Made by a program: the position numbers and the translations under genes | Notes under the pieces: model-generated | Seen by the model: the letters and a program-made list of their open reading frames with translations, nothing else | What the model was told of the DNA's origin: nothing | Databases searched by the model: none | Origin: Octopus sinensis | Lineage: Eukaryota | Reading direction: 5' to 3' | DNA: 64,000 bases | NCBI RefSeq assembly: GCF_006345805.1 | Contig: NC_043013.1 | Location: 59,086,001-59,150,000 of the forward strand | Shown here: positions 1,206 through 42,911 of the stretch, piece after piece | Layout of the letters: every line of letters begins with the position of its first letter | How positions within the stretch are numbered: the stretch's first letter is position 1

Positions 1206-1209
1206 ATTT

Positions 1210-6230: not shown

Positions 6231-6451
6231 TATGAAGTGTGCTGAAAATTTCCTGGCTTTAAGGGTATCACGAAAGGCCTGGTGGGAGGCTCAACCTTCT
6301 GAGTTCTTTTACAGGGCTTAGGAAAACTGAAGCACCACTGCAATAAGTGTGTGGATCTGAGAGAGGAATATGTTGAATAAAATCATAATTAACTGATACT
6401 CCAGTATTTTTTTTTTACCCAAAGCCAGGAACATTTCAGCACCCCCTTGTA
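6231..6451. mobile_element. Mariner-derived MITE (internal deletion derivative)
   Basis: TA-flanked imperfect TIRs TATGAAGTGTGCTGAAAATTTCCTGGCTTT / AAAGCCAGGAACATTTCAGCACCCCCTTGTA. The interior encodes a mariner-like C-terminus (KCVDLREEYVE*). Confidence 0.7.
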
Positions 6452-6510
6452 TGTAATTCAGTTTTATTTCAAAATTTCTTGCTAATAGAGGAAGAGCCAA
6501 TTTCTAACCT

Positions 6511-7060
6511 TGAGCTCCTACCTCTGCTAGCAACAAAGGGTCTCTCTCTCAGAGTGAAAGGGAAATTGTATGATGCCCATGTGCGAACAGCTATGCTGCA
6601 TGACAGTGAAACATGGGCTACACCAGCTGAGGACATGCGTAGGCTTGAGAGAAATGAAGCCAGTATGCTTCGCTAGATGTGCAATGTCACTGTGCATGTG
6701 CAACAGAGGGTAAGCATCTTGAGAGGAAAGTTAGGCATTAGAGGAATCAGATGTGGTGTGCAAGAGAGACGACTGAGCTGGTATGGTCATGCGATGTGTA
6801 TGGATGAGAACAGCTGTGTAAAGTGCTGATCTCTAACTGTGGAGGGAACCTATGGTAGAGGTAGACCCAGGAAGATGTGGGACGAGATGGTGAAGCATGA
6901 CCTCTGAACTTTGAGCCTCACAGAGGCAATGACTAGTGACTGAGACTTTTGGCAATATGCTGTGCTTGAGAAGACCCGTCAAGCCAATTAGTCATGGCTG
7001 ATGATGGTGTCACATAACTGGCACCCACAACCAACACTGGTGGTGCATAAAGAATGTTGT
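6511..7060 (+). pseudogene. 5'-truncated RTE LINE, ORF2 C-terminus plus start of 3' UTR
   Basis: Translation ELLPLLATKGLSLRVKGKLYDAHVRTAMLHDSETW...RLERNEASMLR*MC...WYGH...GRGRPRKMW...EKTRQAN* (stop at 6989-6991) is typical of the RTE ORF2 end. It has internal stops. Confidence 0.85.
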
Positions 7061-10000
7061 TGAAGCACTGGGCCTCATGGAGGCAAAGTGACAAAGTTCC
7101 TTTAAGCGTTGGGCCTCAAGGAGGCAAAGTGGATGAGTTTCTTTTGAGTGTTGGACATCATGGAGACAAAGTGGCTGAGTTCCTTTAAGCATTGGGCCTC
7201 AAGGAGGCAAAGTGGCTGAGTTCCTTTAAGCATTGGGCCTCAAGGAGACAAAGTGGCTGAGTTCCTTAAGCATTGGCATTGGGCCTCAAGGAGGCAAGTG
7301 GCTGAGTTCCTTTAAGCATTGGGCCTCAAGGAGGCAAAGTGGCTGAGTTCCTTTAAGTATTGGACCTCAGGAGGCAAAGTGGCTGAGTTCCTTTAAGTAT
7401 TGGACCTCAGGAGGCAAAGTGGCTGAGTTCCTTTAAGTATTGGACCTCAAGGAGGCAAAGTGGCTGAGTTCCTTTAAGTATTGGACCTCAAGGAGGCAAA
7501 GTGGCTGAGTTCCTTTAAGCATTGGACCTCAAGGAGGCAAAGTGGCTGAGTTCCTTTAAGTATTGGACCTCAAGGAGGCAAAGTGGCTGAGTTCCTTTAA
7601 GTATTGGACCTCAAGGAGGCAAAGTGGCTGAGTTCCTTTAAGTATTGGACCTCAAGGAGGCAAAGTGGCTGAGTTCCTTAAGTATTGGGCCTCAAGGAGG
7701 CAAAGTGGCTGAGTTCCTTTAAGCATTGGGCCTCAAGGAGGCAAAGTGGCTGAGTTCCGTTAAGTATTGGACCTCAAGGAGGCAAAGTGGCTGAGTTCCT
7801 TTAGTATTGGACCTCAAGGGCAAAGTGGCTGAGTTCCTTTAAGCATTGGGCCTCAAGGAGGCAAAGTGGCTGAGTTCCTTTAAGCATTGGGCCTCAAGGA
7901 GGCAAAGTGGCTGAGTTCCTTTAAGTATTGGACCTCAAGGAGGCAAAGTGGCTGAGTTCCTTTAAGCATTGGGCCTCAAGGAGGCAAAGTGGCTGAGTTC
8001 CTTTAAGCATTGGGCCTCAAGGAGGCAAAGTGGCTGAGTTCCTTTAAGTATTGGACCTCAAGGAGGCAAAGTGGCTGAGTTCCTTTAAGTATTGGACCTC
8101 AAAGAGGCAAAGTGGCTGAGTTCCTTGAAGCATTGGGCCTCAAGGAGGCAAAGTGGCTGAGTTCCTTGAAGCATTGGGCCTCAAGGAGGCAAAGTGGCTG
8201 AGTTCCTTGAAGCATTGGGCCTCAAGGAGGCAAAGTGGCTGAGTTCCTTTAAGTATTGGACCTCAAGGAGGCAAAGTGGCTGAGTTCCTTTAAGCATTGG
8301 GCCTCAAGGAGGCAAAGTGGCTGAGTTCCTTTAAGCATTGGGCCTCAAGGAGGCAAAGTGGCTGAGTTCCTTTAAGCATTGGGCCTCAAGGAGGCAAAGT
8401 GGCTGAGTTCCTTTAAGTATTGGACCTCAAGGAGGCAAAGTGGCTGAGTTCCTTTAAGTATTGGACCTCAAAGAGGCAAAGTGGCTGAGTTCCTTGAAGC
8501 ATTGGGCCTCAAGGAGGCAAAGTGGCTGAGTTCCTTGAAGTATTGGACCTCAAGGAGGCAAAGTGGCTGAGTTCCTTTAAGTATTGGACCTCAAAGAGGC
8601 AAAGTGGCTGAGTTCCTTTAAGTATTGGACCTCAAGGAGGCAAAGTGGCTGAGTTCCTTTAAGTATTGGACCTCAAGGAGGCAAAGTGGCTGAGTTCCTT
8701 TAAGTATTGGACCTCAAGGAGGCAAAGTGGCTGAGTTCCTTGAAGCATTGGGCCTCAAGGAGGCAAAGTGGCTGAGTTCCTTTAAGCATTGGGCCTCAAG
8801 GAGGCAAAGTGGCTGAGTTCCTTGAAGCATTGGGCCTCAAGGAGGCAAAGTGGCTGAGTTCCTTGAAGCATTGGGCCTCAAGGAGGCAAAGTGGCTGAGT
8901 TCCTTTAAGTATTGGGCCTCAAGGAGGCAAAGTGGCTGAGTTCCTTTAAGCATTGGGCCCCAAGGAGGCATAGTGGATGAGTTTCTTTTGAGTGTTGGAC
9001 ATCATGGAGACAAAGTGGCTAAGTTTCTTTTGAGTGTTGGACCTCATGGAGACAAAGTGGCTGAGTTCCTTTAAGCATTGGGCCTCAAGGAGGCAAAGTG
9101 GCTGAGTTCCTTTAAGCATTGGGCCTCAAGGAGGCAAAGTGGCTGAGTTCCTTTAAGCATTGGGCCTCAAGGAGGCAAAGTGGCTGAGTTCCTTTAAGCA
9201 TTGGGCCCCAAGGAGGCAAAGTGGCTGAGTTCCTTTAAGCATTGGACCTCAAGGAGGCAAAGTGGCTGAGTTCCTTTAAGCATTGGGCCTCAAGGAGGCA
9301 AAGTGGCTGAGTTCCTTTAAGCATTGGGCCCCAAGGAGGCAAAGTGGCTGAGTTCCTTTAAGCATTGGACCTCAAGGAGGCAAAGTGGCTGAGTCCTTTA
9401 AGCATTGGGCCTCAAGGAGGCAAAGTGGCTGAGTTCCTTGAAGCATTGGGCCTCAAGGAGGCAAAGAAAGTGGCTGAGTTCCTTTGAGTATTGGACCTCA
9501 AGGAGGCAAAGTGGCTGAGTTCCTTTAAGTATTGGACCTCAAGGAGGCAAGTGGCTGAGTTCCTTGAAGTATTGGACCTCAAGGAGGCAAAGTGGCTGAG
9601 TTCCTTTAAGTATTGGACCTCAAGGAGGCAAAGTGGCTGAGTTCCTTTAAGTATTGGACCTCAAGGAGGCAAAGTGGCTGAGTTCCTTTAAGTATTGGAC
9701 CTCAAGGAGGCAAAGTGGCTGAGTTCCTTTAAGTATTGGACCTCAAGGAGGCAAAGTGGCTGAGTTCCTTGAAGCATTGGGCCTCAAGGAGGCAAAGTGG
9801 CTGAGTTCCTTTAAGCATTGGGCCTCAAAGAGGCAAAGTAGCTGAGTTCCTTTAAGTATTGGACCTCAAGGAGGCAAAGTGGCTGAGTTCCTTGAAGCAT
9901 TGGGCCTCAAGGAGGCAAAGTGGCTGAGTTCCTTGAAGCATTGGGCCTCAAGGAGGCAAAGTGGCTGAGTTCCTTTAAGTATTGGACCTCAAGGAGGCAA

Positions 10001-13000
10001 AGTGGCTGAGTTCCTTTAAGTATTGGACCTCAAGGAGGCAAAGTGGCTGAGTTCCTTTAAGTATTGGACCTCAAGGAGGCAAAGTGGCTGAGTTCCTTTA
10101 AGTATTGGACCTCAAGGAGGCAAAGTGGCTGAGTTCCTTTAAGCATTGGGCCTCAAGGAGGCAAAGTGGCTGAGTTCCTTTAAGTATTGGACCTCAAGGA
10201 GGCAAAGTGGCTGAGTTCCTTTAAGTATTGGACCTCAAGGAGGCAAAGTGGCTGAGTTCCTTTAAGTATTGGACCTCAAGGAGGCAAAGTGGCTGAGTTC
10301 CTTTAAGCATTGGGCCTCAAGGAGGCAAAGTGGCTGAGTTCCTTGAAGCATTGGGCCTCAAGGAGGCAAAGTGGCTGAGTTCCTTGAAGCATTGGGCCTC
10401 AAGGAGGCAAAGTGGCTGAGTTCCTTGAAGCATTGGGCCTCAAGGAGGCAAAGTGGCTGAGTTCCTTTAAGCATTGGGCCTCAAGGAGGCAAAGTGGCTG
10501 AGTTCCTTGAAGCATTGGGCCTCAAGGAGGCAAAGTGGCTGAGTTCCTTTAAGCATTGGGCCTCAAGGAGGCAAAGTGGCTGAGTTCCTTGAAGCATTGG
10601 GCCTCAAGGAGGCAAAGTGGCTGAGTTCCTTTAAGCATTGGGCCTCAAGGAGGCAAAGTGGCTGAGTTCCTTGAAGCATTGGGCCTCAAGGAGGCAAAGT
10701 GGCTGAGTTCCTTGAAGCATTGGGCCTCAAGGAGGCAAAGTGGCTGAGTTCCTTTAAGCATTGGGCCTCAAGGAGGCAAAGTGGCTGAGTTCCTTGAAGC
10801 ATTGGGCCTCAAGGAGGCAAAGTGGCTGAGTTCCTGTAAGCATTGGGCCTCAAGGAGGCAAAGTGGCTGAGTTCCTTGAAGCATTGGGCCTCAAGGAGGC
10901 AAAGTGGCTGAGTTCCTTTAAGCATTGGGCCTCAAGGAGGCAAAGTGGCTGAGTTCCTTGAAGCATTGGGCCTCAAGGAGGCAAAGTGGCTGAGTTCCTT
11001 TAAGCATTGGGCCTCAAGGAGGCAAAGTGGCTGAGTTCCTTGAAGCATTGGGCCTCAAGGAGGCAAAGTGGCTGAGTTCCTTGAAGCATTGGGCCTCAAG
11101 GAGGCAAAGTGGCTGAGTTCCTTTAAGTATTGGACCTCAAGGAGGCAAAGTGGCTGAGTTCCTTTAAGTATTGGACCTCAAGGAGGCAAAGTGGCTGAGT
11201 TCCTTTAAGTATTGGACCTCAAGGAGGCAAAGTGGCTGAGTTCCTTTAAGTATTGGACCTCAAGGAGGCAAAGTGGCTGAGTTCCTTTAAGCATTGGGCC
11301 TCAAGGAGGCAAAGTGGCTGAGTTCCTTTAAGTATTGGACCTCAAGGAGGCAAAGTGGCTGAGTTCCTTTAAGTATTGGACCTCAAGGAGGCAAAGTGGC
11401 TGAGTTCCTTTAAGTATTGGACCTCAAGGAGGCAAAGTGGCTGAGTTCCTTTAAGTATTGGACCTCAAGGAGGCAAAGTGGCTGAGTTCCTTTAAGTATT
11501 GGACCTCAAGGAGGCAAAGTGGCTGAGTTCCTTTAAGTATTGGACCTCAAGGAGGCAAAGTGGCTGAGTTCTTTTAAGCATTGGGCCCCAAGGAGGCAAA
11601 GTGGCTGAGTTCCTTGAAGCATTGGGCCTCAAGGAGGCAAAGTGGCTGAGTTCCTTTAAGTATTGGACCTCAAGGAGGCAAAGTGGCTGAGTTCCTTTAA
11701 GCATTGGGCCTCAAGGAGGCAAAGTGGCTGAGTTCCTTGAAGCATTGGGCCTCAAGGAGGCAAAGTGGCTGAGTTCCTTTAAGTATTGGACCTCAAGGAG
11801 GCAAAGTGGCTGAGTTCCTTTAAGCATTGGGCCTCAAAGAGGCAAAGTGGCTGAGTTCCTTGAAGCATTGGGCCTCAAGGAGGCAAAGTGGCTGAGTTCC
11901 TTGAAGCATTGGGCCTCAAGGAGGCAAAGTGGCTGAGTTCCTTTAAGTATTGGACCTCAAGGAGGCAAAGTGGCTGAGTTCCTTTAAGTATTGGACCTCA
12001 AAGAGGCAAAGTGGCTGAGTTCCTTGAAGCATTGGGCCTCAAGGAGGCAAAGTGGCTGAGTTCCTTGAAGCATTGGGCCTCAAGGAGGCAAAGTGGCTGA
12101 GTTCCTTGAAGCATTGGGCCTCAAGGAGGCAAAGTGGCTGAGTTCCTTTAAGTATTGGACCTCAAGGAGGCAAAGTGGCTGAGTTCCTTTAAGCATTGGG
12201 CCTCAAGGAGGCAAAGTGGCTGAGTTCCTTGAAGCATTGGGCCTCAAGGAGGCAAAGTGGCTGAGTTCCTTTAAGTATTGGACCTCAAGGAGGCAAAGTG
12301 GCTGAGTTCCTTTAAGTATTGGACCTCAAAGAGGCAAAGTGGCTGAGTTCCTTGAAGCATTGGGCCTCAAGGAGGCAAAGTGGCTGAGTTCCTTGAAGCA
12401 TTGGGCCTCAAGGAGGCAAAGTGGCTGAGTTCCGTTAAGCATTGGGCCTCAAGGAGGCAAAGTGGCTGAGTTCCTTTAAGTATTGGACCTCAAGGAGGCA
12501 AAGTTGCTGAGTTCCTTGAAGCATTGGGCTTCAAGGAGGCAAAGTGGCTGAGTTCCTTTAAGTATTGGACCTCAAGGAGGCAAAGTGGCTGAGTTCCTTT
12601 AAGTATTGGACCTCAAAGAGGCAAAGTGGCTGAGTTCCTTGAAGCATTGGGCCTCAAGGAGGCAAAGTGGCTGAGTTCCTTGAAGCATTGGGCCTCAAGG
12701 AGGCAAAGTGGCTGAGTTCCTTTAAGCATTGGGCCTCAAGGAGGCAAAGTGGCTGAGTTCCTTTAAGCATTGGGCCCCAAGGAGGCAAAGTGGATGAGTT
12801 TCTTTTGAGTGTTGGACATCATGGAGACAAAGTGGCTAAGTTTCTTTTGAGTGTTGGACCTCATGGAGACAAAGTGGCTGAGTTCCTTTAAGCATTGGGC
12901 CTCAAGGAGGCAAAGTGGCTGAGTTCCTTTAAGCATTGGGCCTCAAGGAGGCAAAGTGGCTGAGTTACTTTAAGCATTGGGCCTCAAGGAGGCAAAGTGG

Positions 13001-16000
13001 CTGAGTTCCTTGAAGCATGGGCCTCAAGGAGGCAAAGTGGCTGAGTTCCTTGAAGCATTGGGCCTCAAGGAGGCAAAGTGGCTGAGTTCCTTTAAGCATT
13101 GGGCCTCAAGGAGGCAAAGTGGCTGAGTTCCTTGAAGCATTGGGCCTCAAGGAGGCAAAGTGGCTGAGTTCCTGTAAGCATTGGGCCTCAAGGAGGCAAA
13201 GTGGCTGAGTTCCTTGAAGCATTGGGCCTCAAGGCGGCAAAGTGGCTGAGTTCCTTAAGCATTGGCCTCAAGGAGGCAAAGTGGCTGAGTTCCTTGAAGC
13301 ATTGGGCCTCAAGGAGGCAAAGTGGCTGAGTTCCTTTAAGCATTGGGCCTCAAGGAGGCAAAGTGGCTGAGTTCCTTGAAGCATTGGGCCTCAAGGAGGC
13401 AAAGTGGCTGAGTTCCTTGAAGCATTGGCCTCAAGGAGGCAAAGTGGCTGAGTTCCTTTAAGTATTGGACCTCAAGGAGGCAAAGTGGCTGAGTTCCTTT
13501 AAGTATGGACCTCAAGGAGGCAAAGTGGCTGAGTTCCTTTAAGTATTGGACCTCAGGAGGCAAAGTGGCTGAGTTCCTTTAAGTATTGGACCTCAAGGAG
13601 GCAAAGTGGCTGAGTTCCTTTAAGCATTGGGCCTCAAGGAGGCAAAGTGGCTGAGTTCCTTTAAGTATTGGACCTCAAGGAGGCAAAGTGGCTGAGTTCC
13701 TTAAGTATTGGACCTCAAGGAGGCAAAGTGGCTGAGTTCCTTTAAGTATGGACCTCAAGGAGGCAAAGTGGCTGAGTTCCTTTAAGTATTGGACCTCAAG
13801 GAGGCAAAGTGGCTGAGTTCCTTTAAGTATTGGACCTCAAGGAGGCAAAGTGGCTGAGTTCCTTTAAGTATTGGACCTCAAGGAGGCAAAGTGGCTGAGT
13901 TCTTTTAAGCATTGGCCCCAAGGAGGCAAAGTGGCTGAGTTCCTTGAAGCATTGGCCTCAAGGAGGCAAAGTGGCTGAGTTCCTTTAAGTATTGGACCTC
14001 AAGGAGGCAAAGTGGCTGAGTTCCTTTAAGCATTGGGCCTCAAGGAGGCAAAGTGGCTGAGTTCCTTGAAGCATTGGGCCTCAAGGAGGCAAAGTGGCTG
14101 AGTTCCTTTAAGTATTGGACCTCAAGGAGGCAAAGTGGCTGAGTTCCTTTAAGCATTGGGCCTCAAGAGGCAAAGTGGCTGAGTTCCTTGAAGCATTGGG
14201 CCTCAAGGAGGCAAAGTTGCTGAGTTCCTTGAAGCATTGGGCCTCAAGAGGCAAAGTGGCTGAGTTCCTTTAAGTATTGGACCTCAAGGAGGCAAAGTGG
14301 CTGAGTTCCTTAAGTATTGGACCTCAAAGAGGCAAAGTGGCTGAGTTCCTTGAAGCATTGGGCCTCAAGGAGGCAAGGCAAAGTGGCTGAGTTCCTTGAA
14401 GCATTGGGCCTCAAGGAGGCAAAGTGGCTGAGTTCCTTGAAGCATTGGGCCTCAAGGAGGCAAGTGGCTGAGTTCCTTTAAGTATTGGACCTCAAGGAGG
14501 CAAAGTGGCTGAGTTCCTTTAAGCATTGGGCCTCAAGGAGGCAAAGTGGCTGAGTTCCTTGAAGCATTGGGCCTCAAGGAGGCAAAGTGGCTGAGTTCCT
14601 TTAAGTATTGGACCTCAAGGAGGCAAAGTGGCTGAGTTCCTTTAAGTATTGGACCTCAAGGAGGCAAAGTGGCTGAGTTCCTTGAAGCATTGGGCCTCAA
14701 GGAGGCAAAGTGGCTGAGTTCCTTGAAGCATTGGGCCTCAAGGAGGCAAAGTGGCTGAGTTCCGTTAAGCATTGGGCCTCAAGGAGGCAAAGTGGCTGAG
14801 TTCCTTTAAGTATTGGACCTCAAGGAGGCAAAGTTGCTGAGTTCCTTGAAGCATTGGGCTTCAAGGAGGCAAAGTGGCTGAGTTCCTTTAAGTATTGGAC
14901 CTCAAGGAGGCAAAGTGGCTGAGTTCCTTTAAGTATTGGACCTCAAGAGGCAAAGTGGCTGAGTTCCTTGAAGCATTGGGCCTCAAGGAGGCAAAGTGGC
15001 TGAGTTCCTTGAAGCATTGGGCCTCAAGGAGGCAAAGTGGCTGAGTTCCTTTAAGCATTGGGCCTCAAGGAGGCAAAGTGGCTGAGTTCCTTTAAGCATT
15101 GGGCCCCAAGGAGGCAAAGTGGATGAGTTTCTTTTGAGTGTTGGACATCATGGAGACAAAGTGGCTAAGTTTCTTTTGAGTGTTGGACCTCATGGAGACA
15201 AAGTGGCTGAGTTCCTTTAAGCATTGGGCCTCAAGGAGGCAAAGTGGCTGAGTTCCTTTAAGCATTGGGCCTCAAGGAGGCAAAGTGGCTGAGTTCCTTT
15301 AAGCATTGGGCCTCAAGGAGGCAAAGTGGCTGAGTTCCTTTAAGCATTGGGCCCCAAGGAGGCAAAGTGGCTGAGTTCCTTTAAGCATTGGACCTCAAGG
15401 AGGCAAAGTGGCTGAGTTCCTTTAAGCATTGGGCCTCAAGGAGGCAAAGTGGCTGAGTTCCTTTAAGCATTGGGCCCCAAGGAGGCAAAGTGGCTGAGTT
15501 CCTTTAAGCATTGGACCTCAAAGAGGCAAAGTGGCTGAGTTCCTTTAAGCATTGGGCCTCAAGGAGGCAAAGTGGCTGAGTTCCTTGAAGCATTGGGCCT
15601 CAAGGAGGCAAAGTGGCTGAGTTCCTTTGAGTATTGGACCTCAAGGAGGCAAAGTGGCTGAGTTCCTTTAAGTATTGAACCTCAAAGAGGCAAAGTGGCT
15701 GAGTTCCTTTAAGTATTGGACCTCAAGGAGGCAAAGTGGCTGAGTTCCTTGAAGCATTGGGCCTCAAGGAGGCAAAGTGGCTGAGTTCCTTTAAGTATTG
15801 GACCTCAAAGAGGCAAAGTGGCTGAGTTCCTTTAAGTATTGGACCTCAAGGAGGCAAAGTGGCTGAGTTCCTTTAAGTATTGGACCTCAAAGAGGCAAAG
15901 TGGCTGAGTTCCTTTAAGTATTGGACCTCAAGGAGGCAAAGTGGCTGAGTTCCTTTAAGTATTGGACCTCAAAGAGGCAAAGTGGCTGAGTTCCTTGAAG

Positions 16001-19000
16001 CATTGGGCCTCAAGGAGGCAAAGTGGCTGAGTTCCTTGAAGCATTGGGCCTCAAGGAGGCAAAGTGGCTGAGTTCCTTTAAGCATTGGGCCCCAAGGAGG
16101 CAAAGTGGCTGAGTTCCTTTAAGTATTGGACCTCAAAGAGGCAAAGTGGCTGAGTTCCTTTAAGTATTGGACCTCAAGGAGGCAAAGTGGCTGAGTTCCT
16201 TTAAGTATTGGACCTCAAAGAGGCAAAGTGGCTGAGTTCCTTTAAGTATTGGACCTCAAGGAGGCAAAGTGGCTGAGTTCCTTTAAGTATTGGACCTCAA
16301 AGAGGCAAAGTGGCTGAGTTCCTTTAAGTATTGGACCTCAAGGAGGCAAAGTGGCTGAGTTCATTGAAGCATTGGGCCTCAAGGAGGCAAAGTGGCTGAG
16401 TTCCTTTAAGTATTGGACCTCAAAGAGGCAAAGTGGCTGAGTTCCTTTAAGTATTGGACCTCAAGGAGGCAAAGTGGCTGAGTTCCTTTAAGTATTGGAC
16501 CTCAAAGAGGCAAAGTGGCTGAGTTCCTTTAAGTATTGGACCTCAAGGAGGCAAAGTGGCTGAGTTCCTTTAAGTATTGGACCTCAAAGAGGCAAAGTGG
16601 CTGAGTTCCTTGAAGCATTGGGCCTCAAGGAGGCAAAGTGGCTGAGTTCCTTGAAGCATTGGGCCTCAAGGAGGCAAAGTGGCTGAGTTCCTTGAAGCAT
16701 TGGGCCTCAAGGAGGCAAAGTGGCTGAGTTCCTTGAAGCATTGGACCTCAAAGAGGCAAAGTGGCTGAGTTCCTTTAAGCATTGGGCCTCAAGGAGGCAA
16801 AGTGGCTGAGTTCCTTTAAGTATTGGACCTCAAGGAGGCAAAGTGGCTGAGTTCATTGAAGCATTGGGCCTCAAGGAGGCAAAGTGGCTGAGTTCCTTTA
16901 AGTATTGGACCTCAAAGAGGCAAAGTGGCTGAGTTCCTTTAAGTATTGGACCTCAAGGAGGCAAAGTGGCTGAGTTCCTTTAAGTATTGGACCTCAAAGA
17001 GGCAAAGTGGCTGAGTTCCTTTAAGTATTGGACCTCAAGGAGGCAAAGTGGCTGAGTTCCTTTAGTATTGGACCTCAAAGAGGCAAAGTGGCTGAGTTCC
17101 TTGAAGCATTGGGCCTCAAGGAGGCAAGTGGCAAAGTGGGGGATTGTGAGTTCCTAAGCATTGGGCCTCAAGGAGGCAAAGTGGCTGAGTTCCTTGAAGC
17201 ATTGGCCTCAAGGAGGCAAAGTGGCTGAGTTCCTTGAAGCATTGGACCTCAAAGAGGCAAAGTGGCTGAGTTCCTTTAAGCATTGGGCCTCAAGGAGGCA
17301 AAGTGGCTGAGTTCCTTGAAGCATTGGGCCTCAAGGAGGCAAAGTGGCTGAGTTCCTTGAAGCATTGGACCTCAAAGAGGCAAAGTGGCTGAGTTCCTTG
17401 AAGCATTGGACCTCAAGGAGGCAAAGTGGCTGAGTTCCTTTAAGTATTGGACCTCAAGGAGGCAAAGTGGCTGAGTTCCTTTAAGTATTGGACCTCAAGG
17501 AGGCAAAGTGGCTGAGTTCCTTTAAGTATTGGACCTCAAGGAGGCAAAGTGGCTGAGTTCCTTGAAGCATTGGGCCTCAAGGAGGCAAAGTGGCTGAGTT
17601 CCTTTAAGTATTGGACCTCAAGGAGGCAAAGTGGCTGAGTTCCTTTAAGTATTGGACCTCAAGGAGGCAAAGTGGCTGAGTTCCTTTAAGCATTGGACCT
17701 CAAGGAGGCAAAGTGGCTGAGTTCCTTTAAGCATTGGGCCTCAAGGAGGCAAAGTGGCTGAGTTCCTTGAAGCATTGGGCCTCAAGGAGGCAAAGTGGCT
17801 GAGTTCCTTTAAGCATTGGGCCTCAAGGAGGCAAAGTGGCTGAGTTCCTTTAAGTATTGGACCTCAAGGAGGCAAAGTGGCTGAGTTCCTTTAAGTATTG
17901 GACCTCAAGGAGGCAAAGTGGCTGAGCTCCTTTAAGTATTGGACCTCAAGGAGCAAAGTGGCTGAGTTCCTTGAATCATTGGGCCTCAAGGAGGCAAAGT
18001 GGCTGAGTTCCTTTAAGTTTGGACCTCAAGGAGGCAAAGTGCTGAGTTCCTTTAAGTATTGGACCTCAAGGAGGCAAAGTGGCTGAGTTCCTTTAAGCAT
18101 TGGGCCTCAAGGAGGCAAAGTGGCTGAGTTCCTTTAAGTATTGGACCTCAAGGAGGCAAAGTGGCTGAGTTCCTTTAAGTATTGGACCTCAAGGAGGCAA
18201 AGGGCTGAGTTCCTTGAAGCATTGGCCTCAAGGAGGCAAAGTGGCTGAGTTCCTTTAAGTATTGGACCTCAAGGAGGCAAAGTGGCTGAGTTCCTTTAAG
18301 CATTGGACCTCAAGGAGGCAAAGTGGCTGAGTTCCTTTAAGCATTGGGCCTCAAGGAGGCAAAGTGGCTGAGTTCCTTTAAGCATTGGGCCTCAAGGAGG
18401 CAAAGTGGCTGAGTTCCTTGAAGCATTGGGCCTCAAGGAGGCAAAGTGGCTGAGTTCCTTTAAGCATTGGGCCTCAAGGAGGCAAAGTGGCTGAGTTCCT
18501 TTAAGCATTGGGCCTCAAGGAGGCAAAGTGGCTGAGTTCCTTGAAGCATTGGGCCTCAAGGAGGCAAAGTGGCTGAGTTCCTTGAAGCATTGGGCCTCAA
18601 GGAGGCAAAGTGGCTGAGTTCCTTTAAGCATTGGGCCTCAAGGAGGCAAAGTGGCTGAGTTCCTTAAGCATTGGGCCTCAAGGAGGCAAAGTGGCTGAGT
18701 CCTTGAAGCATGGGCCTCAAGGAGGCAAAGTGGCTGAGTTCCTTTAAGCATTGGGCCTCAAGGAGGCAAAGTGGCTGAGTTCCTTTAAGCATTGGGCCTC
18801 AAGGAGGCAAAGTGGCTGAGTTCCTTGAAGCATTGGGCCTCAAGGAGGCAAAGTGGCTGAGTTCCTTGAAGCATTGGACCTCAAAGGGCAAAGTGGCTGA
18901 GTTCCTTGAAGCATTGGACCTCAGGAGGCAAAGTGGCTGAGTTCCTTTAAGTATTGGGCCTCATCAGGAGGCAAAGTGGCTGAGTTCCTTTAAGCATTGG

Positions 19001-21890
19001 GCCTCAAGGAGCAAAGTGGCTGAGTTCCTTTAAGCATTGGGCCTCAAGGAGGCAAAGTGGCTGAGTTCCTTGAAGCATTGGGCCTCAAGGAGGCAAAGTG
19101 GCTGAGTTCCTTGAAGCATTGGACCTCAAGAGGCAAAGTGGCTGATTTCCTTGAAGCATTGGGCCTCAGGAGGCAAAGTGGCTGAGTTCCTTGAAGCATT
19201 GGGCCTCAAGGAGGCAAAGTGGCTGAGTTCCTTGAAGCATTGGACCTCAAAGAGGCAAAGTGGCTGAGTTCCTTGAAGCATTGGGCCTCAAGGAGGCACA
19301 GTGGCTGAGTTCCTTTAAGTATTGGACCTCAAGGAGGCAAAGTGGCTGAGTTCCTTTAAGCATTGGGCCTCAAGGAGGCAAAGTGGCTGAGTTCCTTGAA
19401 GCATTGGGCCTCAAGGAGGCAAAGTGGCTGAGTTCCTTGAAGCATTGGACCTCAAAGAGGCAAAGTGGCTGAGTTCCTTGAAGCATTGGGCCTCAAGGAG
19501 GCAAAGTGGCTGAGTTCCTTTAAGTATTGGACCTCAAGGAGGCAAAGTGGCTGAGTTCCTTTAAGTATTGGACCTCAAGGAGGCCAAAGTGGCTGAGTTC
19601 CTTTAAGTATTGGACCTCAAGGAGGCAAAGTGGCTGAGTTCCTTTAAGTATTGGACCTCAAGGAGGCAAAGTGGCTGAGTTCCTTTAAGTATTGGACCTC
19701 AAGGAGGCAAAGTGGCTGAGTTCCTTTAAGTATTGGACCTCAAGGAGGCAAAGTGGCTGAGTTCCTTTAAGCATTGGGCCCCAAGGAGGCAAAGTGGATG
19801 AGTTCCTTGAAGCATTGGGCCTCAAGGAGGCAAAGTGGCTGAGTTCCTTTAAGTATTGGACCTCAAGGAGGCAAAGTGGCTGAGTTCCTTGAAGCATTGG
19901 GCCTCAAGGAGGCAAAGTGGCTGAGTTCCTTTAAGTATTGGACCTCAAAGAGGCAAAGTGGCTGAGTTCCTTGAAGCATTGGGCCTCAAGGAGGCAAAGT
20001 GGCTGAGTTCTTGAAGCATTGGGCCTCAAGGAGGCAAAGTGGCTGAGTTCCTTTAAGCATTGGGCCCCAAGGAGGCAAAGTGGATGAGTTTCTTTAAGTA
20101 TTGGACCTCAAGGAGGCAAAGTGGCTGAGTTCCTTTAAGTATTGGACCTCAAGGAGGCAAAGTGGATGAGTTTCTTGAAGCATTGGGCCTCAAGGAGGCA
20201 AAGTGGCTGAGTTCCTTTAAGTATTGGACCTCAAAGAGGCAAAGTGGCTGAGTTCCTTGAAGCATTGGGCCTCAAGGAGGCAAAGTGGCTGAGTTCCTTG
20301 AAGCATTGGGCCTCAAGGAGGCAAAGTGGCTGAGTTCCTTTAAGCATTGGGCCCCAAGGAGGCAAAGTGGATGAGTTTCTTTAAGTATTGGACCTCAAGG
20401 AGGCAAAGTGGCTGAGTTCCTTTAAGCATTGGGCCCCAAGGAGGCAAAGTGGATGAGTTTCTTGAAGCATTGGACCTCAAGGAGGCAAAGTGGCTGAGTT
20501 CCTTTAAGTATTGGACCTCAAGGAGGCAAAGTGGATGAGTTCCTTGAAGCATTGGGCCTCAAGGAGGCAAAGTGGCTGAGTTCCTTTAAGCATTGGGCCT
20601 CAAGGAGGCAAAGTGGCTGAGTTCCTTTAAGTATTGGACCTCAAGGAGGCAAAGTGGCTGAGTTCCTTTAAGTATTGGACCTCAAGGAGGCAAAGTGGAT
20701 GAGTTTCTTTTGAGTGTTGGACCTCATGGAGACAAAGTGGCTGAGTTCCTTTAAGCATTGGGCCTCAAGGAGGCAAAGTGGCTGAGTTCCTTGAAGCATT
20801 GGGCCTCAAGGAGGCAAAGTGGCTGAGTTCCTTTTGAGTGTTGGACATCATGGAGACAAAGTGGCTAAGTTTCTTTTGAGCGTTGGACCTCATGGAGACA
20901 AAGTGGCTGAGTTCCTTTAAGCATTGGGCCTCAAGGAGGCAAAGTGGCTGAGTTCCTTGAAGCATTGGGCCCCAAGGAGGCAAAGTGGATGAGTTTCTTT
21001 GAGTGGGGACATCATGGAGACAAAGTGGCTAAGTTTCTTTTGAGTGTTGGACCTCATGGAGACAAGTGGCTGAGTTCCTTTAAGCATTGGGCCTCAAGGA
21101 GGCAAAGTGGCTGAGTTCCTTGAAGCATTGGGCCTCAAGGAGGCAAAGTGGCTGAGTTCCTTTAAGCATTGGGCCCCAAGGAGGCAAAGTGGATGAGTTT
21201 CTTTTGAGTGTTGGACATCATGGAGACAAAGTGGCTAAGTTTCTTTTGAGTGTTGGACCTCATGGAGACAAAGTGGCTGAGTTCCTTTAAGCATTGGGCC
21301 TCAAGGAGGCAAAGTGGCTGAGTTCCTTTAAGCATTGGGCCTCAAGGAGGCAAAGTGGCTGAGTTCCTTTAAGCATTGGGCCTCAAGGAGGCAAAGTGGC
21401 TGAGTTCCTTTAAGCATTGGGCCTCAAGGAGGCAAAGTGGCTGAGTTCCTTTAAGCATTGGACCTCAAGGAGGCAAAGTGGCTGAGTTCCTTTAAGTATT
21501 GGACCTCAAGGAGGCAAAGTGGCTGAGTTCCTTTAAGTATTGGACCTCAAGGAGGCAAAGTGGCTGAGTTCCTTGAAGCATTGGGCCTCAAGGAGGCAAA
21601 GTGGATGAGTTCCTTGAAGCATTGGGCCTCATGGAGGCAAAGTGGCTGAGTTCCTTTAAGTATTGGACCTCAAAGAGGCAAAGTGGCTGAGTTCCTTTAA
21701 GCATTGGGACCAAGGAGGCAAAGTGGCTGAGTTCCTTTAAGTATTGGACCTCAAGGAGGCAAAGTGGCTGAGTTCCTTTAAGTATTGGACCTCAAGGAGG
21801 CAAAGTGGTTGAGTTCCTTTTGAGCATTGGGCCTCATGGAGACAAAATGGCTACATTCCTTTTGAGTATTGGGCCTGAGAGAGGCAATGA
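7061..21890. repeat. Satellite/minisatellite array, 41-bp monomer AAGGAGGCAAAGTGGCTGAGTTCCTT(T/G)AAG(C/T)ATTGG(G/A)CCTC, about 360 copies
   Basis: Period measured directly (7531 to 7572 = 41 bp). The array is continuous over ~14.8 kb with a few recurrent variants. Confidence 0.98.
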
Positions 21891-22169
21891 CTGAAACCTT
21901 TGGCATTATGCCAGGCTTGAGAAAAAGACCCATCAAGCTGAGCAAAATCACAGTCATGCAGATACTGGTGCCACACAAATGGTACCCATGCTGGTGACAT
22001 GTAAAAGCACCTATTACATGCTTGGAGTGGTTGACATTAGGAAGGGCACTCAGCCATAGAAAACCATGCCAAATCAGAATGGCGTCTTGTACAGCCAGGC
22101 ACTATTCTGGTCAAACCATCCAACCCATGCCAGTATGGACACCGGACGTTAAAGAATGATGATAAGGAG
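21860..22169 (+). mobile_element. 3' end of the same RTE insertion (duplicated ORF-end segment, 3' UTR, GAT tail)
   Basis: GAGGCAATGACTGAAACCTTTGG...GAGAAAAAGACCCATCAAGC...GGAAGGGCAC...CCATGCCAGTATGGACACCGGACGTTAAAGAATGATGAT. Confidence 0.8.
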
Positions 22170-22767
22170 GATCTAAGGCTCCTTCATTGGAATTTCAGCA
22201 ACATCAAGAGGATATTTGCATGTATGTGTGTATATGTGCAGCATTTGGAGTGCAGTGCATGTGCAGATTTTTATATTATGTTTTAGGTATGTATTCTCAT
22301 ACGTATAGTTGCTCCTTAAGATATACATATATATACTTAAATAAGGAACTTCTGGGTATGTATGTATGTCGTTCAGTTTTATTTCAAGATTTCTTGTCAA
22401 TAGAGAAAGAGCCAATTTCTAACCTAGATCCAAGGTTCTTTCATTGGAATTTCAACTTCAACAACAGAGTATGTATGTATGTATGTATGTCCCCCACCTG
22501 CGAACACCTTCACGCCACTACATTATACACCACTATACCACACAACACACCACCTCGCACACATCAGCACTGACCACTTCCCAGACCCCCATTTTCACAC
22601 CTACACATACACACACGTACACGTCAAGATCACCAGCCCTCTTCCACACATACATACAAACTCTCTTATACATACGCACGCGCACCTTCGTTTTGGGATC
22701 GATCACCACTACTTTGTTATCTCCCCTTCTCCCTAGCTCTCCTGTGTGACCCTTATGTCCAGCATTC

Positions 22768-29029: not shown

Positions 29030-29968
29030 ATAGTTTTTGTGTGTAGCAAATGTTCAGGAGCAATAAACACTAAAGATGCGCAGAGACCAACTTCCGCCAC
29101 ATTCCAGGGAGAAAAACTAGAAATAGTTGATAGCTTCCGTTACCTAGGTGACCAAGTCATTAGCGGGGGCAGGTGTGCTGAAAGTGTAGCTACTAGAATA
29201 AGAATAGCCTGGGCAAAGTTCAGAGATCTCCTATCTCTGCTGGTGATAAATGGCCTCTTGCTCAGAGTAAAAGGCAGACTGTATGACACATGTGTGTGAG
29301 CAGCCATGCTACAAGGCAGTGAAACATTGGCCGTGATTGCTGAGAACATGCGTAAACTTGCATTGGGCCTCACCGAAGCAATGACAAGTGACTGAGACCT
29401 TTGGAAATATGCTATGCTTGAGAAGACCCAGCAAGCCAAGTGAGACCATAAACATGGCCTATGCCAGTGCAGCATAACCAGTCCATTTAAGAGTACCCTT
29501 CAATCATTGGGCAATAAACTACGCTTGCGAAGACCTGTTGAGGCAAGTGAAATCATTATCATGGCTGATTACTATACCGCCTGATTGGCACACGTGCCAG
29601 TGGCACGTAAAGAGCACCATTCAAGCATGATCATTGCCAGTGTCGCATGACTGGCTCCTGTGATGGTGGTACGTAAAAAACACCATTTGAGCGTGGTCGT
29701 TGCCAGTACCCCCTGACTGGCTCCTGTGTCAGTGACACGTAAAAAGCATCATTTGAGCGTGGTCTATACCAGTACCGCCTGACAGGCCCTCATGCTGGTG
29801 GCACATAAAAAGCACCCACTACACTCTCTGAGTGGTTGGCGTTAGGAAGAGTATCCAGCTGTAGAAACTTTGCCAGATCAGACTGGAGCCTGGTGCAGCC
29901 TTCTGGCTTGCCAGCCCTCAGCCAACCGCCCAACCCATGCCAGCATGGAAAGCGGATGTTAAACGATG
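29030..29968 (+). mobile_element. 5'-truncated, internally deleted RTE LINE (ORF2 end plus 3' UTR with sub-repeats)
   Basis: Translation GEKLEIVDSFRYLGD...RIRIAWAKFRDL...RVKGRLYDTCV, followed by UTR and a GAT tail. Confidence 0.85.
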
Positions 29969-29973
29969 ATATG

Positions 29974-30926: not shown

Positions 30927-30959
<33 letters not shown>

Positions 30960-30981: not shown

Positions 30982-33900
30982 CAGTAGTTTTTTATTTTTA
31001 TAGCGTGCTGCTTTCACTTCACTACGAGCGCAGCTCTGTGTGCCTTGGGTATGGCTGTGATTTGTTGTGATGCTCTGATGGTTATTGTATGGAAAGTGTT
31101 CTGCGTAGGATGTGTGCAGTGCCTAGTAGTGCAATTTTCTGTATGTTATATGTGTTTGTAAGTCCTGGTGTTTTTGTTATGTATTTGTCTGAATATTTTT
31201 TTATCATGCCTAATGCACCTACTATGATAGGAATTGTTTCTGTTTTCAGGTTCCACATTCTAGTTACCCCTCTATTTCCAGGTCTTTGTATTTTGGAGTT
31301 TCTCCATTTCTTTTAGAGACACGTTTGTCATCTGCCGGTATTGATACATCATTAGAAAGCATTTTTTTTCTTCATGATCTCTGACAACTATATCTGGTCT
31401 GTTGGCCTTAATTTCTCTATCTGTGTGTATCGGCATATCCCAGAGTATGGTTGCTTTCTCGTTTTCTGTGACCTTTTCTGGTGTGTGCCTATACCATCTT
31501 TTTTCTGTTGTTATTCCATAATGTTGGCATAGCTTCCAATGTATGTAGGTTCCAACTCTGTCATGTCTGTGAATATATTCCTTCTTAGCCAGGACTGGGC
31601 AGCTAGAGATAATATGATTTTTGTTTTCTTGTCCATCTCCACATATTCTGCAGTTACTTGTAATATTTCTTTTCATTACATGTTTTTGGTAATTTCTGGT
31701 TGGGAGGCTTTGGTCTTGTGCTGCAATTAAAAATCCTTCTGTTTCTGCTTTTTGAGTCCTGAGCTTCTCAACCATTGCTGGGATTTTTCTTTGTCTATTT
31801 CTTTTGCGTTTAGTTTAGTGCAGTATTTACCATGAAGGGGTTTTTCTTGCCATCGTTTTATCATGGCTCGTTGCTGTTCTATTTTAGTTTGGATTTCATT
31901 TGTTTTATAGCTTTTGTTGTTTCTTCATCATCTTCTTTCTCTTCTTTGTGTTTATTATGGTGGTATGATTCTTGTTTGTATTGTCAGCTTCCTTAAATAC
32001 TGAGAACAGTTTTTTGTTTTGCTCGTGTTTTGCTGGCTATGCTGATCAGTTTTCCTTCCTTCTGAAGTAGGTTATTTTTGCAGTCCTATGGTGGTTATTT
32101 TATAGTAGTTTTTCCAGCTGTATAAGGCCTCTACCACCTTCTATACGTTGTATATATAGTCTTTCTATGTCAGATTTTGGGTGATGCATCCTAGATCCTT
32201 CAGTATTTTTCTTGTTTTCTATCTATTTTGGACAGTTCATTTCGTGTCCAGTTAGGATATTTAGCTGCTTTAACTTATAATCTGGGACACTAAAGTGTTG
32301 ATACCTATTATCCTGTTTTTAGCATGAGCTCTTTTTTAGTATTGATCTAACTCGTCTATAATATTCTTTTTTTATTTTCTCTTTCATTTGTGTGTGTTGT
32401 GTCTTATCTAGTTCATGGATTCCTAAGTATTTGTAAGTTTGGCTTTGGTCTAATTCTTTTATTTCATTGGTTTTATCTAGTGTGATGTTGTTATGCTTGG
32501 AATGGTTGACATTAGGAAGGGCACCCAGCCATAGAAAACCATGCCAAATCAGAATGGTGTCTGATACAGCCAGACACTATTCTGGTCAAACCATCCAACC
32601 CATGCCAGTATGGACACCGGACGTTAAAAGTTGATGATGAGGAGGATCTAAGGCTCCTTCATTGGAATTTCAGCAACATCAAGAGGATATTTGCATGTAT
32701 GTGTGTATATGTGCAGCATTTGGAGTGCAGTGCATGTGCAGATTTTTATATTATGTTTTATGTATGTATTCTCATACGTATAGTTGCTCCTTAAGATATA
32801 CATATATATACTTAAATAAGGAACTTCTGGAAAGTTTTACAAATTTTTTGCAGTTCCAGTGATGGCTTGGATCTGTAGTCTTCAAATCAGCTTTCTCTTT
32901 TCACGTATGCATGCATGCATGCATGTATGTATGTATGTATGTATGTATGTATGTATGTATGTATGTATGTATGTATGCTTCTGTGCAGGTGGCACATAAA
33001 AAGCACTATTTGAGCGTGGCCGTTGCCAGTACTGCCTGACTGGCCCTCGTGCTGGTGGCACGTAAAACCACCCACTACACTCTCAGAGTGGTTGGCGTTA
33101 GGAAGGGCATCCTGCTGTAGAAACTCTATCAGATCAGATTGGAGTCTGGTGCAGCCATCAGGTTCGCCATGGAAAGCGGGCGTTAAACGGTGATGATGAT
33201 GATGATTATGTATGTATGTATGTATGTCGTTATTCAGTTTCATTTCAAGATTTCTTGTCAATAGAGAAAGAGCCAATTTCTAACCTAGATCTAAGGTTCC
33301 TTCATTGGAATTTCAACTTCAACAACAGAGTATGTATGTATGTATGTATGTATGTATGTATGTATGTATGTCCCCCATCTCCGAACACCATCACACCACT
33401 ACACCATGCACCACCATACCACACATCACATCACATCACAACACACCACCTCGCACACATCAGCACTGACCACTTCCCAGACTCACATTTTCGCACCTAC
33501 ACATACACACATGCACATGTGAAGATCACCAGCCCTCTTCTACACGTACATACAAACTCTCTTATACATACTCACGCGCACCTTCATTTTGAGATCACCA
33601 CTACTTTATTATCTCCCCTTCTCCCTAGCTCTTCTGTGTGACCCTTCTGCCCAGCATTCGCCATGATAGATCGCTAGCCACTACACATTATTTTCTCTCC
33701 TTGTTTCTTTCTGTGTTCCTTTCTGTGGAAGAGCGTAGGCTCAAAACGTTAAAGACTTTTTCACTTCCCGAGCATTATACTAATACATCTGTTTGTTGTC
33801 TACACCACCTGTATTTGTAAGTATTTGTAAGTTTGGCTTTGGTCTAATTCTTTTATTTCATTGGTTTATCTAGTGTGATGTTGTTACTCTTAACTAGTTT

Positions 33901-42862: not shown

Positions 42863-42911
<49 letters not shown>

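What the first reader, a model, noticed from the sequence alone, without database searches (positions are those of the whole stretch)
6511..22169. A 15-kb satellite lies wholly inside one RTE insertion that splits an older repeat
Left of 6511 the sequence ends ...GAGCCAATTTCTAACCT, and right of 22169 it resumes GATCTAAGGCTCCTTCATTGGAATTTC. The uninterrupted 'empty site' GAGCCAATTTCTAACCTAGATC(C/T)AAGG..TTCATTGGAATTTC is visible at ~22410-22455 and ~33270-33315. So the RTE ORF2 end, the satellite and the RTE 3' UTR form a single 15.66-kb insert. A 5'-truncated LINE of about 1 kb apparently grew a ~360-unit array in situ, which would be a snapshot of satellite birth with a defined ancestral state.
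Basis: partly seen in the sequence, partly recalled or inferred. Interest (0 to 1): 0.8.

Follow-up and report, generated by a model that had tools for sequence, protein, structure and literature searches.

The report
LINE-borne 41-bp repeat expanded to 15 kb
A short repeat unit that an octopus jumping gene (an RTE-like LINE) already carries once in its tail has expanded at this one insertion to about 360 tandem copies (15 kb), a clean but not unprecedented example of how mobile elements seed satellite-like DNA.

Summary
A 41-bp array (7063-21887, about 361 units) lies inside a 15.66-kb block (6511-22169). The two flanks of that block, when joined, align across the junction to intact copies of a roughly 125-bp local repeat.

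The block is one 5'-truncated RTE-like LINE. It holds a decayed ORF2 end (6512-6991), then 3'UTR, the array, more 3'UTR, and a (GAT)n-type terminus.

New here: the array is flanked by two diverged copies of the same LINE segment, which could have meant two insertions. An independent copy of the same subfamily in Octopus vulgaris has the same layout in one piece, with a single 41-bp unit where the window has 361. So the two pieces belong together, and the unit and the duplication around it are older than this insertion. Only the expansion is specific to this locus.

In-situ growth is inferred from three things: the array is homogeneous (214 of 362 units are exact copies of three variants), it holds a 2.3-kb block duplication at 98.8%, and no other element interrupts it. 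The LINE parts beside it, by contrast, are only about 80% identical to the comparator copy.

Whether this 41-mer is a genome-wide satellite could not be tested. This is a new member of a known kind (a LINE-derived tandem array), of moderate interest.

The parts
6448..6510 (+). Left half of the older local repeat (OR-A), ending ...GAGCCAATTTCTAACCT
   Evidence: Aligns to the left halves of the intact copies at 22363-22490 and 33229-33353.
6511..6991 (+). 5'-truncated RTE-like LINE: the last 159 codons of ORF2, decayed. In-frame stops lie at 6674-6676, 6827-6829, 6905-6907 and 6941-6943; the native stop TAG is at 6989-6991.
   Evidence: Translation. The fragment is 64% identical to the ORF2 C-termini P0001 and P0002, and 80-84% identical over its first part to P0009/P0012 (no organism given) and to P0011, an Octopus bimaculoides protein. 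It is 80% identical over 479 bp to O. vulgaris copy L002:15629-15172.
6908..6947 (+). A1: the ORF2 codons (LSLTEAMTSD*D) from which the 41-bp unit ultimately derives
   Evidence: The array consensus aligns to A1 of three LINE copies at 67-70% over the full unit. Against the independent window copy at 29360-29400, the local alignment score is reached by none of 1000 shuffles.
6992..7062 (+). Proximal 3'UTR (end of B1 plus a partial U-type unit, ...GGTGGTGCATAAAG...) that leads into the array
   Evidence: Aligns with the stretch of the O. vulgaris copy just before its single M unit.
7063..21863 (+). 41-bp tandem array of about 361 units (M units). Three variants make up 214 of 362 units. Ancestral-type units (..TCATGGAG..) sit at both edges and in a few internal blocks.
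   Evidence: TRF; unit segmentation and variant map. Block duplication 10592-13052 against 12931-15382 at 98.8%, and 8907-9440 against 15053-15587 at 99.3%.
21864..21901 (+). A2: a 38-bp native LINE 3'UTR unit, the last repeat unit, in register with the array
   Evidence: Aligns with A2 of the O. vulgaris copy. The A2-B2 segments of the two copies are 83% identical, against 65-69% for A1-B1 against A2-B2.
21902..22169 (+). Distal 3'UTR (B2, one U unit, tail) and the 3' terminus ...GTTAAAGAATGATGATAAGGAG
   Evidence: Aligns with the O. vulgaris copy down to its ...AATGATGATGA end. The tail is shared with at least 7 other RTE or SINE-like tails in the window.
22170..22236 (+). Right half of the older local repeat (OR-A), starting GATCTAAGGCTCCTTCATTGGAATTTC
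22363..22490 (+). Intact paralogue of the older repeat (OR-B), used as an 'empty site'
33229..33353 (+). Second intact paralogue of the older repeat (OR-D), used as an 'empty site'
32493..32830 (+). Second copy of the last 152 bp of the LINE tail plus the right flank: the same junction, duplicated after the insertion
   Evidence: Self-BLAST: 22018-22355 matches 32493-32830 at 96.7%, and the flank part alone at 99.2%.
29055..29970 (+). Comparator: another RTE-like copy, of a sister subfamily. It has a single A unit and no M unit, but its 3'UTR holds a 66-bp repeat of 3.7 copies.
   Evidence: TRF.

Best explanation
**What the element looked like before insertion (shown).** An RTE-like LINE subfamily of octopuses has a 3'UTR that begins with a diverged duplicate of the element's own ORF2 end. 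The order is ORF2-end(A1)-stop-B1-U'-M-A2-B2-U-tail-(GAT)n. M is a 41-bp unit and A2 is its 38-bp homologue, so the two sit head to tail as a ready-made tandem pair.

**Insertion (largely shown).** A 5'-truncated copy, about 0.9 kb long, inserted by target-primed reverse transcription into a local repeat of about 125 bp. The real 3' terminus, the 5' truncation, the flanks that join into an empty site and the lack of a target-site duplication are all shown. That it was target-primed reverse transcription follows from what is known of LINEs.

**Expansion (inferred).**
- The M unit multiplied at this locus from about 1-2 copies to about 361.
- Small steps of 1-3 units (runs such as bbbb, cacaca, cabcab) point to replication slippage or unequal exchange.
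- Large steps (a 57-unit, 2.3-kb block duplication) point to unequal sister-chromatid or homologue exchange.
- Derived variants (..TCAAGGAGG..) swept the interior. Ancestral-type units (..TCATGGAG..) survive at both edges.

**Function.** Nothing indicates one. This is most likely a neutral, locus-specific macro-minisatellite or nascent satellite.
For: **Structure of the block**
- Array.
- Joined flanks and empty sites.
- ORF2 end with four stops.
- Homology to ORF2 C-termini, one hit being an O. bimaculoides protein. Further Octopus hits with the related query.
- RVT_1 and PHD domains in relatives.

**Origin of the unit**
- The array consensus aligns over its whole length to the ORF2-end codons of the independent window copy at 29360-29400. 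None of 1000 shuffles reaches that score.

**Architecture already present before this insertion**
- O. vulgaris locus L002 (OX597814.1) holds an independent copy with different flanks and a different 5' end.
- That copy reads, in one stretch: A1-B1-U', then one unit GAGCAGTGAGCCTCACAGAGGCAAAGTGGCTGAGTTCCTTTC (86% to the array consensus, with an exact 19-mer match), then A2-B2-U-U-tail.
- Matching segments in the two copies are more alike (A1-B1 79.6%, A2-B2 83.3%) than the duplicated segments are to each other (64.6-69.2%). So the duplication is older than both copies.

**Growth at this locus**
- 214 of 362 units are exact copies of three variants, and mean pairwise identity is 93.3%.
- Block duplicates are 98.8-99.3% identical.
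- No foreign insertion interrupts 14.8 kb of array.
- The LINE parts beside the array are only about 80% identical to the comparator and carry four stops in 159 codons.
- Edge units keep states shared with the O. vulgaris units.

**The 3'UTR is prone to tandem duplication in general**
- 61-66-bp repeats of 3.3-5.3 copies occur in three other tails in the window.
- The 29-kb copy carries a duplication of B with a period of about 107 bp.
Against: - Only one independent copy of the subfamily could be fetched, so 'one unit' as the ancestral number rests on a single comparator. That copy could itself have contracted.
- No orthologous locus, other haplotype or read data could be examined. Array length and in-situ growth are therefore not shown directly.
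- The window's species is not identified, beyond being an octopod with the same LINE subfamily as O. vulgaris.
- RTE-clade membership was not tested by RT phylogeny, because the insert lacks the RT and endonuclease domains.
- The 41-mer was not found in any collection I could scan, but those collections hold almost no cephalopod DNA. Its genome-wide status is unknown.
- A second copy of the LINE tail plus right flank at 32493-32830 shows that the local history is more complex than one insertion followed by one expansion.
Confidence: 0.75

Rival explanations
1. The array, or a sizeable part of it, already existed in the source LINE and arrived by retrotransposition. Only modest turnover followed at this locus.
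For: The M unit and the A-B duplication are features of the subfamily and are older than this insertion. Copy number of the neighbouring U repeat varies among copies, from 1 to 5.3, so 3'UTR repeat numbers do differ between transcripts or copies.
Against: The one independent copy has a single unit. A cDNA of 15.7 kb would be several times longer than the 4.5-kb octopus RTE described in PMC9115989 (an ORF of 3327 nt plus two UTRs of about 600 nt). Units are far more alike (three variants give 59% of units; blocks 98.8-99.3%) than expected if they had decayed since insertion as the flanking LINE parts have. No 41-mer array sits at any other LINE or SINE-like tail in the window.
Confidence: 0.13
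2. Assembly artefact: the array length, or the join across it, is wrong. Reads from several loci may have been collapsed or concatenated.
For: Long, homogeneous arrays are error-prone in assemblies, and no read data could be examined here.
Against: Both array edges are in register with the native LINE sequence, exactly where an independent copy has its single unit. The outer flanks rejoin into one repeat. The array has a non-periodic, locus-like order of variants with graded edges, rather than a uniform collapse.
Confidence: 0.07
3. Two different LINE insertions, or a recombinant between two copies, bracket an unrelated satellite. The left and right pieces do not belong to one element.
For: The left stretch 6911-7027 and the right stretch 21869-21988 are homologous but only about 68-78% identical. 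At first sight this looks like two elements.
Against: The same pair of diverged segments, in the same order and orientation, occurs in one stretch in the O. vulgaris copy. Matching segments are more alike than duplicated ones. The outer flanks form one empty site. The unit itself is LINE-derived.
Confidence: 0.02

Closest known systems
PisTR-A satellite, from the hypervariable 3'UTR of Ogre LTR retrotransposons in pea (Macas et al. 2009, as summarised in review PMC9659126)
   Same: A short tandem repeat already present in a retroelement's 3'UTR is amplified into long arrays. The number of 3'UTR repeats varies among element copies.
   Different: That is a plant LTR element and this is an RTE-like LINE. 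PisTR-A is a documented genome-wide satellite, whereas only one array is known here. Here the unit derives from duplicated coding sequence (the ORF2 end).
LINE-derived satellites: chicken HinfI/SCR1 (CR1 3'UTR plus partial ORF2), Phodopus PROsat and harbour-seal Pvc20 (L1 ORF2), and the common cetacean satellite (L1 3' end), as listed in Table 1 of PMC9659126
   Same: The monomer is homologous to the ORF2 end or 3'UTR of a non-LTR retrotransposon.
   Different: Those are abundant satellites whose progenitor locus is unknown. Here the array is still embedded, in register, in a single identifiable LINE insertion with an empty-site paralogue. No RTE-derived case appears in that table.
Satellite-like arrays carried by Helentron non-autonomous elements in the Pacific oyster (PMC7492417)
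   Same: In a mollusc genome, tandem repeats sit inside mobile elements, and mobile elements may act as carriers of array seeds.
   Different: Those are DNA transposons (Helitron-type) with many short dispersed arrays. Here a LINE carries one 15-kb array, and dispersal of arrays has not been shown.
Microsatellite families generated by RTE elements (Tay et al. 2010, cited in PMC9115989 for octopus RTE-2_OV)
   Same: RTE 3' ends are known sources of simple tandem repeats. The element here ends in a (GAT)n-type repeat.
   Different: Those are terminal microsatellites of 2-6 bp. The array here is an internal 41-bp unit derived from a duplicated ORF2 end.
Tandem dimers of transposable elements as substrates for satellite evolution (McGurk and Barbash 2018; from my own knowledge, not read here)
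   Same: A pre-existing head-to-tail pair of homologous units provides the substrate for unequal exchange.
   Different: In that model the dimer is made by double insertion of whole elements. Here the pair (M-A2) is an internal duplication carried by the element itself.

Membership tests
TE-derived tandem array (LINE 3'UTR/ORF2-derived satellite-like DNA) | Long head-to-tail array of a unit longer than a microsatellite | tested here: met
   361.6 copies of 41 bp, 14.8 kb; 362 units segmented.
TE-derived tandem array (LINE 3'UTR/ORF2-derived satellite-like DNA) | Monomer homologous to a defined segment of the element | tested here: met
   The consensus aligns full-length to the ORF2-end codons of three LINE copies (67-70%). 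Against the independent 29-kb copy, none of 1000 shuffles reaches the observed score. It is 86% identical to the single M unit of the O. vulgaris copy.
TE-derived tandem array (LINE 3'UTR/ORF2-derived satellite-like DNA) | Array in register with the element, at the position of the progenitor unit | tested here: met
   U'-M on the left and M-A2-B2 on the right match the contiguous O. vulgaris copy.
Satellite DNA in the strict sense | Same monomer in arrays at many loci, or at high genomic abundance | not testable with these tools
   No cephalopod genome can be searched at the DNA level. There were no hits in JGI metagenomes, GTDB genomes or IMG/VR, none elsewhere in the window, and no paper holds the core 15-mer.
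RTE-clade non-LTR retrotransposon | RT domain that groups with the RTE clade; single ORF with an APE-type endonuclease | tested here: inconclusive
   The insert lacks RT and endonuclease because of its 5' truncation. The related O. vulgaris copy P0013 has RVT_1, and relatives have RVT_1 plus a PHD finger. The copy in L002 is itself 5'-truncated, so no endonuclease was seen. No phylogeny was run. An RTE-clade LINE is documented in octopus (PMC9115989).
RTE-clade non-LTR retrotransposon | 3' end is a short tandem repeat rather than poly(A); frequent 5' truncation; tail shared with SINE-like elements | tested here: met
   The termini read ...AATGATGATAAGGAG (window)...GTTGATGATGAGGAG (32620-32644)...AATGATGATGA (O. 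vulgaris) and ...GGTGATGATGATGATGAT (33180-33200). The 5' end lies inside ORF2. The tail matches at least 7 other tails.
Single retrotransposon insertion (filled site against empty site) | Flanks rejoin into a continuous sequence seen intact elsewhere | tested here: met
   The caveat is that the intact copies are paralogues at about 84% identity, not the orthologous allele.

The most novel reading that the evidence does not exclude
This LINE subfamily acts as a vehicle that scatters a ready-made tandem pair (M-A2) around the octopus genome. Several of those seeds would then have expanded independently, so that the 41-mer is a dispersed, or even major, octopus satellite whose progenitor element and single-unit ancestral state are both known. 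On that reading this locus is one of many stages of a satellite being born from a LINE 3'UTR.
Probability: 0.18. Interest if true: 0.55.

Novelty: new member of a known kind. Interest (0 to 1): 0.35.

Why it matters
Satellites born from transposable elements are well documented. In most cases, though, only the end product is seen: an abundant satellite with some similarity to an element.

Here four things can be read together in plain sequence:
- the array is still embedded, in register, in one datable insertion;
- a paralogous empty site is present;
- an independent copy of the element shows the state before expansion, with one unit next to its homologue;
- the array's internal variant map records how it grew (small-step runs, a 2.3-kb block duplication, and old units kept at the edges).

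That makes it a useful worked example, and a possible marker locus for array-length polymorphism in octopus populations. Cephalopod satellite DNA is almost undescribed in the literature I could search. It does not change what is known about how satellites arise.

Tried and rejected
- **Two insertions or a recombinant.** I considered this after finding that 6911-7027 and 21869-21988 are homologous but diverged. I rejected it because the O. vulgaris copy has both segments in one stretch and matching segments are more alike than duplicated ones.
- **Duplication of A-B created at this locus or at insertion (template jump).** Rejected for the same reason.
- **Searching for the 41-mer elsewhere.** JGI metagenomes, GTDB genomes and IMG/VR gave no hits. 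These collections are uninformative for cephalopods.
- **Exact look-ups of window ORFs to find the source assembly or other haplotypes.** I tried the junction ORF 6479-6676, plus 22187-22573, 31275-31775 and 50658-51017. None is on record. P0011 (O. bimaculoides) is not on record either.
- **More copies of the subfamily.** The ENA contigs L001, L003 and L004 are either the sister subfamily or too short.
- **Pfam on the ORF2 fragment.** No family matched, because the fragment lies C-terminal to RVT_1.
- **Strict BLAST inside the array.** It merges all diagonals and was useless. I replaced it with comparison at the level of single units. A first fuzzy-regex segmentation mis-segmented the array and was replaced by wrap-around dynamic programming.
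- **Coding potential of the array.** Reading the consensus by eye, stops fall in every frame on both strands, so I dropped a protein-based search for other arrays.
Full report
**1. The observation**

Tandem Repeats Finder reports a single array at 7063-21887, with period 41, 361.6 copies, 94% matches and 1% indels. A wrap-around alignment to the consensus AAGCATTGGGCCTCAAGGAGGCAAAGTGGCTGAGTTCCTTT segments it into 362 full units. 303 of them are exactly 41 bp long, and none carries more than 11 extra bases, so nothing foreign interrupts 14.8 kb.

The left-flank word GAGCCAATTTCTAACCT occurs at 6494, 22409 and 33270. The right-flank word TTCATTGGAATTTCA occurs at 22183, 22440, 32658 and 33301. 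Shuffled sequence gives about 0 matches for either.

The joined flanks align across the junction to 22363-22490 (83.6%, E 5e-33) and to 33229-33353 (84.8%, E 4e-34). At the junction only one base is missing or changed, and there is no target-site duplication. The 15.66-kb block 6511-22169 is therefore a real insert relative to paralogous copies of a local repeat of about 125 bp.

**2. What the block is**

Positions 6512-6991 translate to the last 159 codons of a LINE ORF2 (...LYDAHVRTAMLHDSETW...GRGRPRKMWDEMVKHDL*TLSLTEAMTSD*DFWQYAVLEKTRQAN*). There are four in-frame stops, and the native stop is at 6989-6991.

This fragment is 64% identical to full ORF2 C-termini from environmental contigs. 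Over its first part it is 80-84% identical to three shorter proteins, one of them from Octopus bimaculoides. Relatives carry RVT_1 and a PHD finger.

The right end...GTTAAAGAATGATGATAAGGAG, is the element's true 3' terminus. The same tail and a (GAT)n-type end recur in at least 7 other LINE or SINE-like tails in the window and in O. vulgaris copies.

RTE-clade membership is plausible. Octopus RTE elements with microsatellite 3' ends are documented in PMC9115989. I could not test it by RT phylogeny, because the insert lacks the RT domain.

**3.

The array is bracketed by two diverged copies of the same LINE segment. Positions 6911-7027 (the ORF2 end, A1, plus the start of the 3'UTR, B1) are homologous to 21869-21988 (A2-B2), at only about 68-78% identity.

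The 41-bp unit is itself a derivative of the A segment, that is, of the codons for ...LGLTEAMTSDRD.W. The consensus aligns over its full length to the A segment of an unrelated window copy at 29360-29400 (33 of 44 positions), and none of 1000 shuffles reaches that score.

Taken alone, the diverged duplication could mean two insertions.

**4. The test against an independent copy**

A protein hit from the O. vulgaris chromosome assembly (P0013) let me fetch 20.9 kb of OX597814.1 as locus L002. It holds three copies of this LINE.

One of them, L002:15792-14770 on the minus strand, is the closest to the window's left piece (80% over 479 bp). It has different flanks and a different 5' end, so it is an independent insertion.

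It reads in one contiguous stretch:
- ORF2 end, A1, B1 and U' (GGTGGTATGTAAAGG);
- one unit, GAGCAGTGAGCCTCACAGAGGCAAAGTGGCTGAGTTCCTTTC;
- A2 (GTGTTGGGCCTCATGGAGGAAATGACCAAGACCTTTG), B2, U, U and the tail ...AATGATGATGA.

The single unit is 86% identical to the array consensus and shares an exact 19-mer with it.

Matching segments in the two copies are more alike (A1-B1 79.6%, A2-B2 83.3%) than any A1-B1 against A2-B2 comparison (64.6-69.2%).

Three conclusions follow:
- The left and right pieces of the window insert belong to one element.
- The A-B duplication and the M unit are traits of the LINE subfamily and are older than this insertion.
- The array sits exactly where the progenitor has one unit next to its homologue A2.

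A sister subfamily lacks M. It is represented by window 29055-29970, by two further L002 copies and by contig L003.

**5. How the array grew**

*Variant composition.* Three variants that differ at 1-3 positions account for 214 of 362 units, and mean pairwise identity is 93.3%.

*Pattern along the array.* The variant map shows runs (bbbb), alternations (cacaca) and triplets (cabcab). It also shows a tandem block duplication of 57 units: 10592-13052 against 12931-15382, 98.8% over 2.47 kb. A second duplicated block is 8907-9440 against 15053-15587, at 99.3%.

*Ancestral units.* Units with ..TCATGGAG.. share that state with the O. vulgaris A2 unit and with the first and last array units. There are only 17 of them. 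They lie at both edges and in a few internal pairs that travelled with block duplications.

*Contrast with the flanks.* The LINE parts beside the array are about 20% diverged from the comparator and carry four stops.

I infer that the array expanded and kept turning over at this locus long after the insertion. Small steps came by slippage or unequal exchange, and large steps by unequal crossing-over. This is an inference from relative divergence, not a direct observation.

*A 3'UTR prone to duplication.* The same 3'UTR is generally prone to tandem duplication. Units of 61-66 bp are repeated 3.3-5.3 times in three other tails (29575-29816, 49415-49630, 52557-52882). The 29-kb copy has a B duplication with a period of about 107 bp.

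**6. A complication in the local history**

The last 152 bp of the LINE tail plus the right flank occur again at 32493-32830. That copy is 96.7% identical overall and 99.2% in the flank. Homology then continues at only 88% (22356-22926 against 33214-33818), with a 384-bp extra block in the second copy.

On its left, the second copy abuts the 5' end of a minus-strand LINE. That element has a zf-RVT ORF at 31272-31775 and an (AAT)n tail at 30931-30981.

So the insertion is older than a local segmental duplication or gene conversion. The 'empty sites' belong to this duplicated neighbourhood. They are paralogues, not the allele from before the insertion. The second copy stops short of the array site, so it says nothing about array size at the time of duplication.

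**7. Rival readings**

- *A pre-expanded array copied by retrotransposition.* This cannot be excluded, but it is disfavoured by the single-unit comparator, by the 15.7-kb length and by the array's homogeneity.
- *An assembly artefact.* This cannot be tested without reads. It is disfavoured because both array edges are in register with the native element and the outer flanks rejoin.
- *Two insertions.* This is contradicted by section 4.

**8. Comparison with what is known**

Retroelement 3'UTRs and LINE ORF2/3' ends are established sources of satellites. Examples are Ogre giving PisTR-A, CR1 giving the chicken HinfI repeat, L1 giving PROsat, Pvc20 and the cetacean common satellite, and HeT-A giving 18HT (review PMC9659126).

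In molluscs, satellite-like arrays ride on Helentrons (PMC7492417). RTE elements are known to generate terminal microsatellites (cited in PMC9115989).

I found no RTE-derived case in that review's table, and no paper on octopus satellite DNA in the searchable library.

This is therefore a new member of a known kind. Its merit is how clearly it can be read: element, single-unit state before expansion, empty-site paralogue and growth record are all visible. Whether the 41-mer is a genome-wide satellite, and whether the LINE spreads expandable seeds, remains open and is easy to test with a cephalopod genome search.

Noticed in passing
window 32493-32830 (and 33214-33818): The last 152 bp of the LINE tail plus the right flank are duplicated 10.5 kb downstream: 96.7% overall and 99.2% in the flank. 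Homology then drops to 88%, with a 384-bp extra block (SSR plus a SINE-like tail). The uneven identity suggests an old segmental duplication that was partly homogenised by gene conversion.
   Followed up: partly
window 30931-32492, minus strand: A different LINE, with a 167-aa ORF at 31272-31775 that matches zf-RVT (E 4.7e-5, below Pfam's cut-off) and an (AAT)17 tail at 30931-30981. Its 5' end abuts the second copy of the RTE tail at 32492/32493.
   Followed up: partly
window 29575-29816, 49415-49630, 52557-52882: Tandem repeats of 61-66 bp, 3.3-5.3 copies, whose unit holds GGTGGCACGTAAAAAGCACC. They lie in the 3' regions of other RTE or SINE-like tails, so this 3'UTR appears to vary in repeat number from copy to copy.
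   Followed up: partly
window 57828-58260 and 58780-59211: A near-perfect inverted repeat with arms of 433 nt (99-100% complementary) and a 519-nt spacer. It could be a foldback-type element, a recent inverted duplication or an assembly artefact.
   Followed up: no
window 779-1209, 41790-42200, 42667-43084, 44867-45258, 49050-49314, 52164-52389, 61216-61624: A dispersed repeat family of about 420 bp, with at least 7 copies in both orientations at 80-92% identity. It is unclassified.
   Followed up: no
window 62387-62741 and 62742-63700: Another RTE ORF2 fragment stops abruptly at 62741. Downstream there is a decayed frame that looks like a retroviral-type integrase (about 63250-63330, IAPYHPRSNGQVECFVDT). 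I read this from the sequence and did not scan it.
   Followed up: no
window 50655-51017, minus strand: A 120-aa ORF that resembles the N-terminal helix-turn-helix part of a mariner-type transposase. This is from recall and was not scanned.
   Followed up: no
L002 (O. vulgaris OX597814.1:48558987-48579868): Three copies of the RTE-like LINE lie within 21 kb, next to a nuclear-hormone-receptor gene (zf-C4 and Hormone_recep domains). Two belong to the subfamily without the M unit and one to the subfamily with it.
   Followed up: partly
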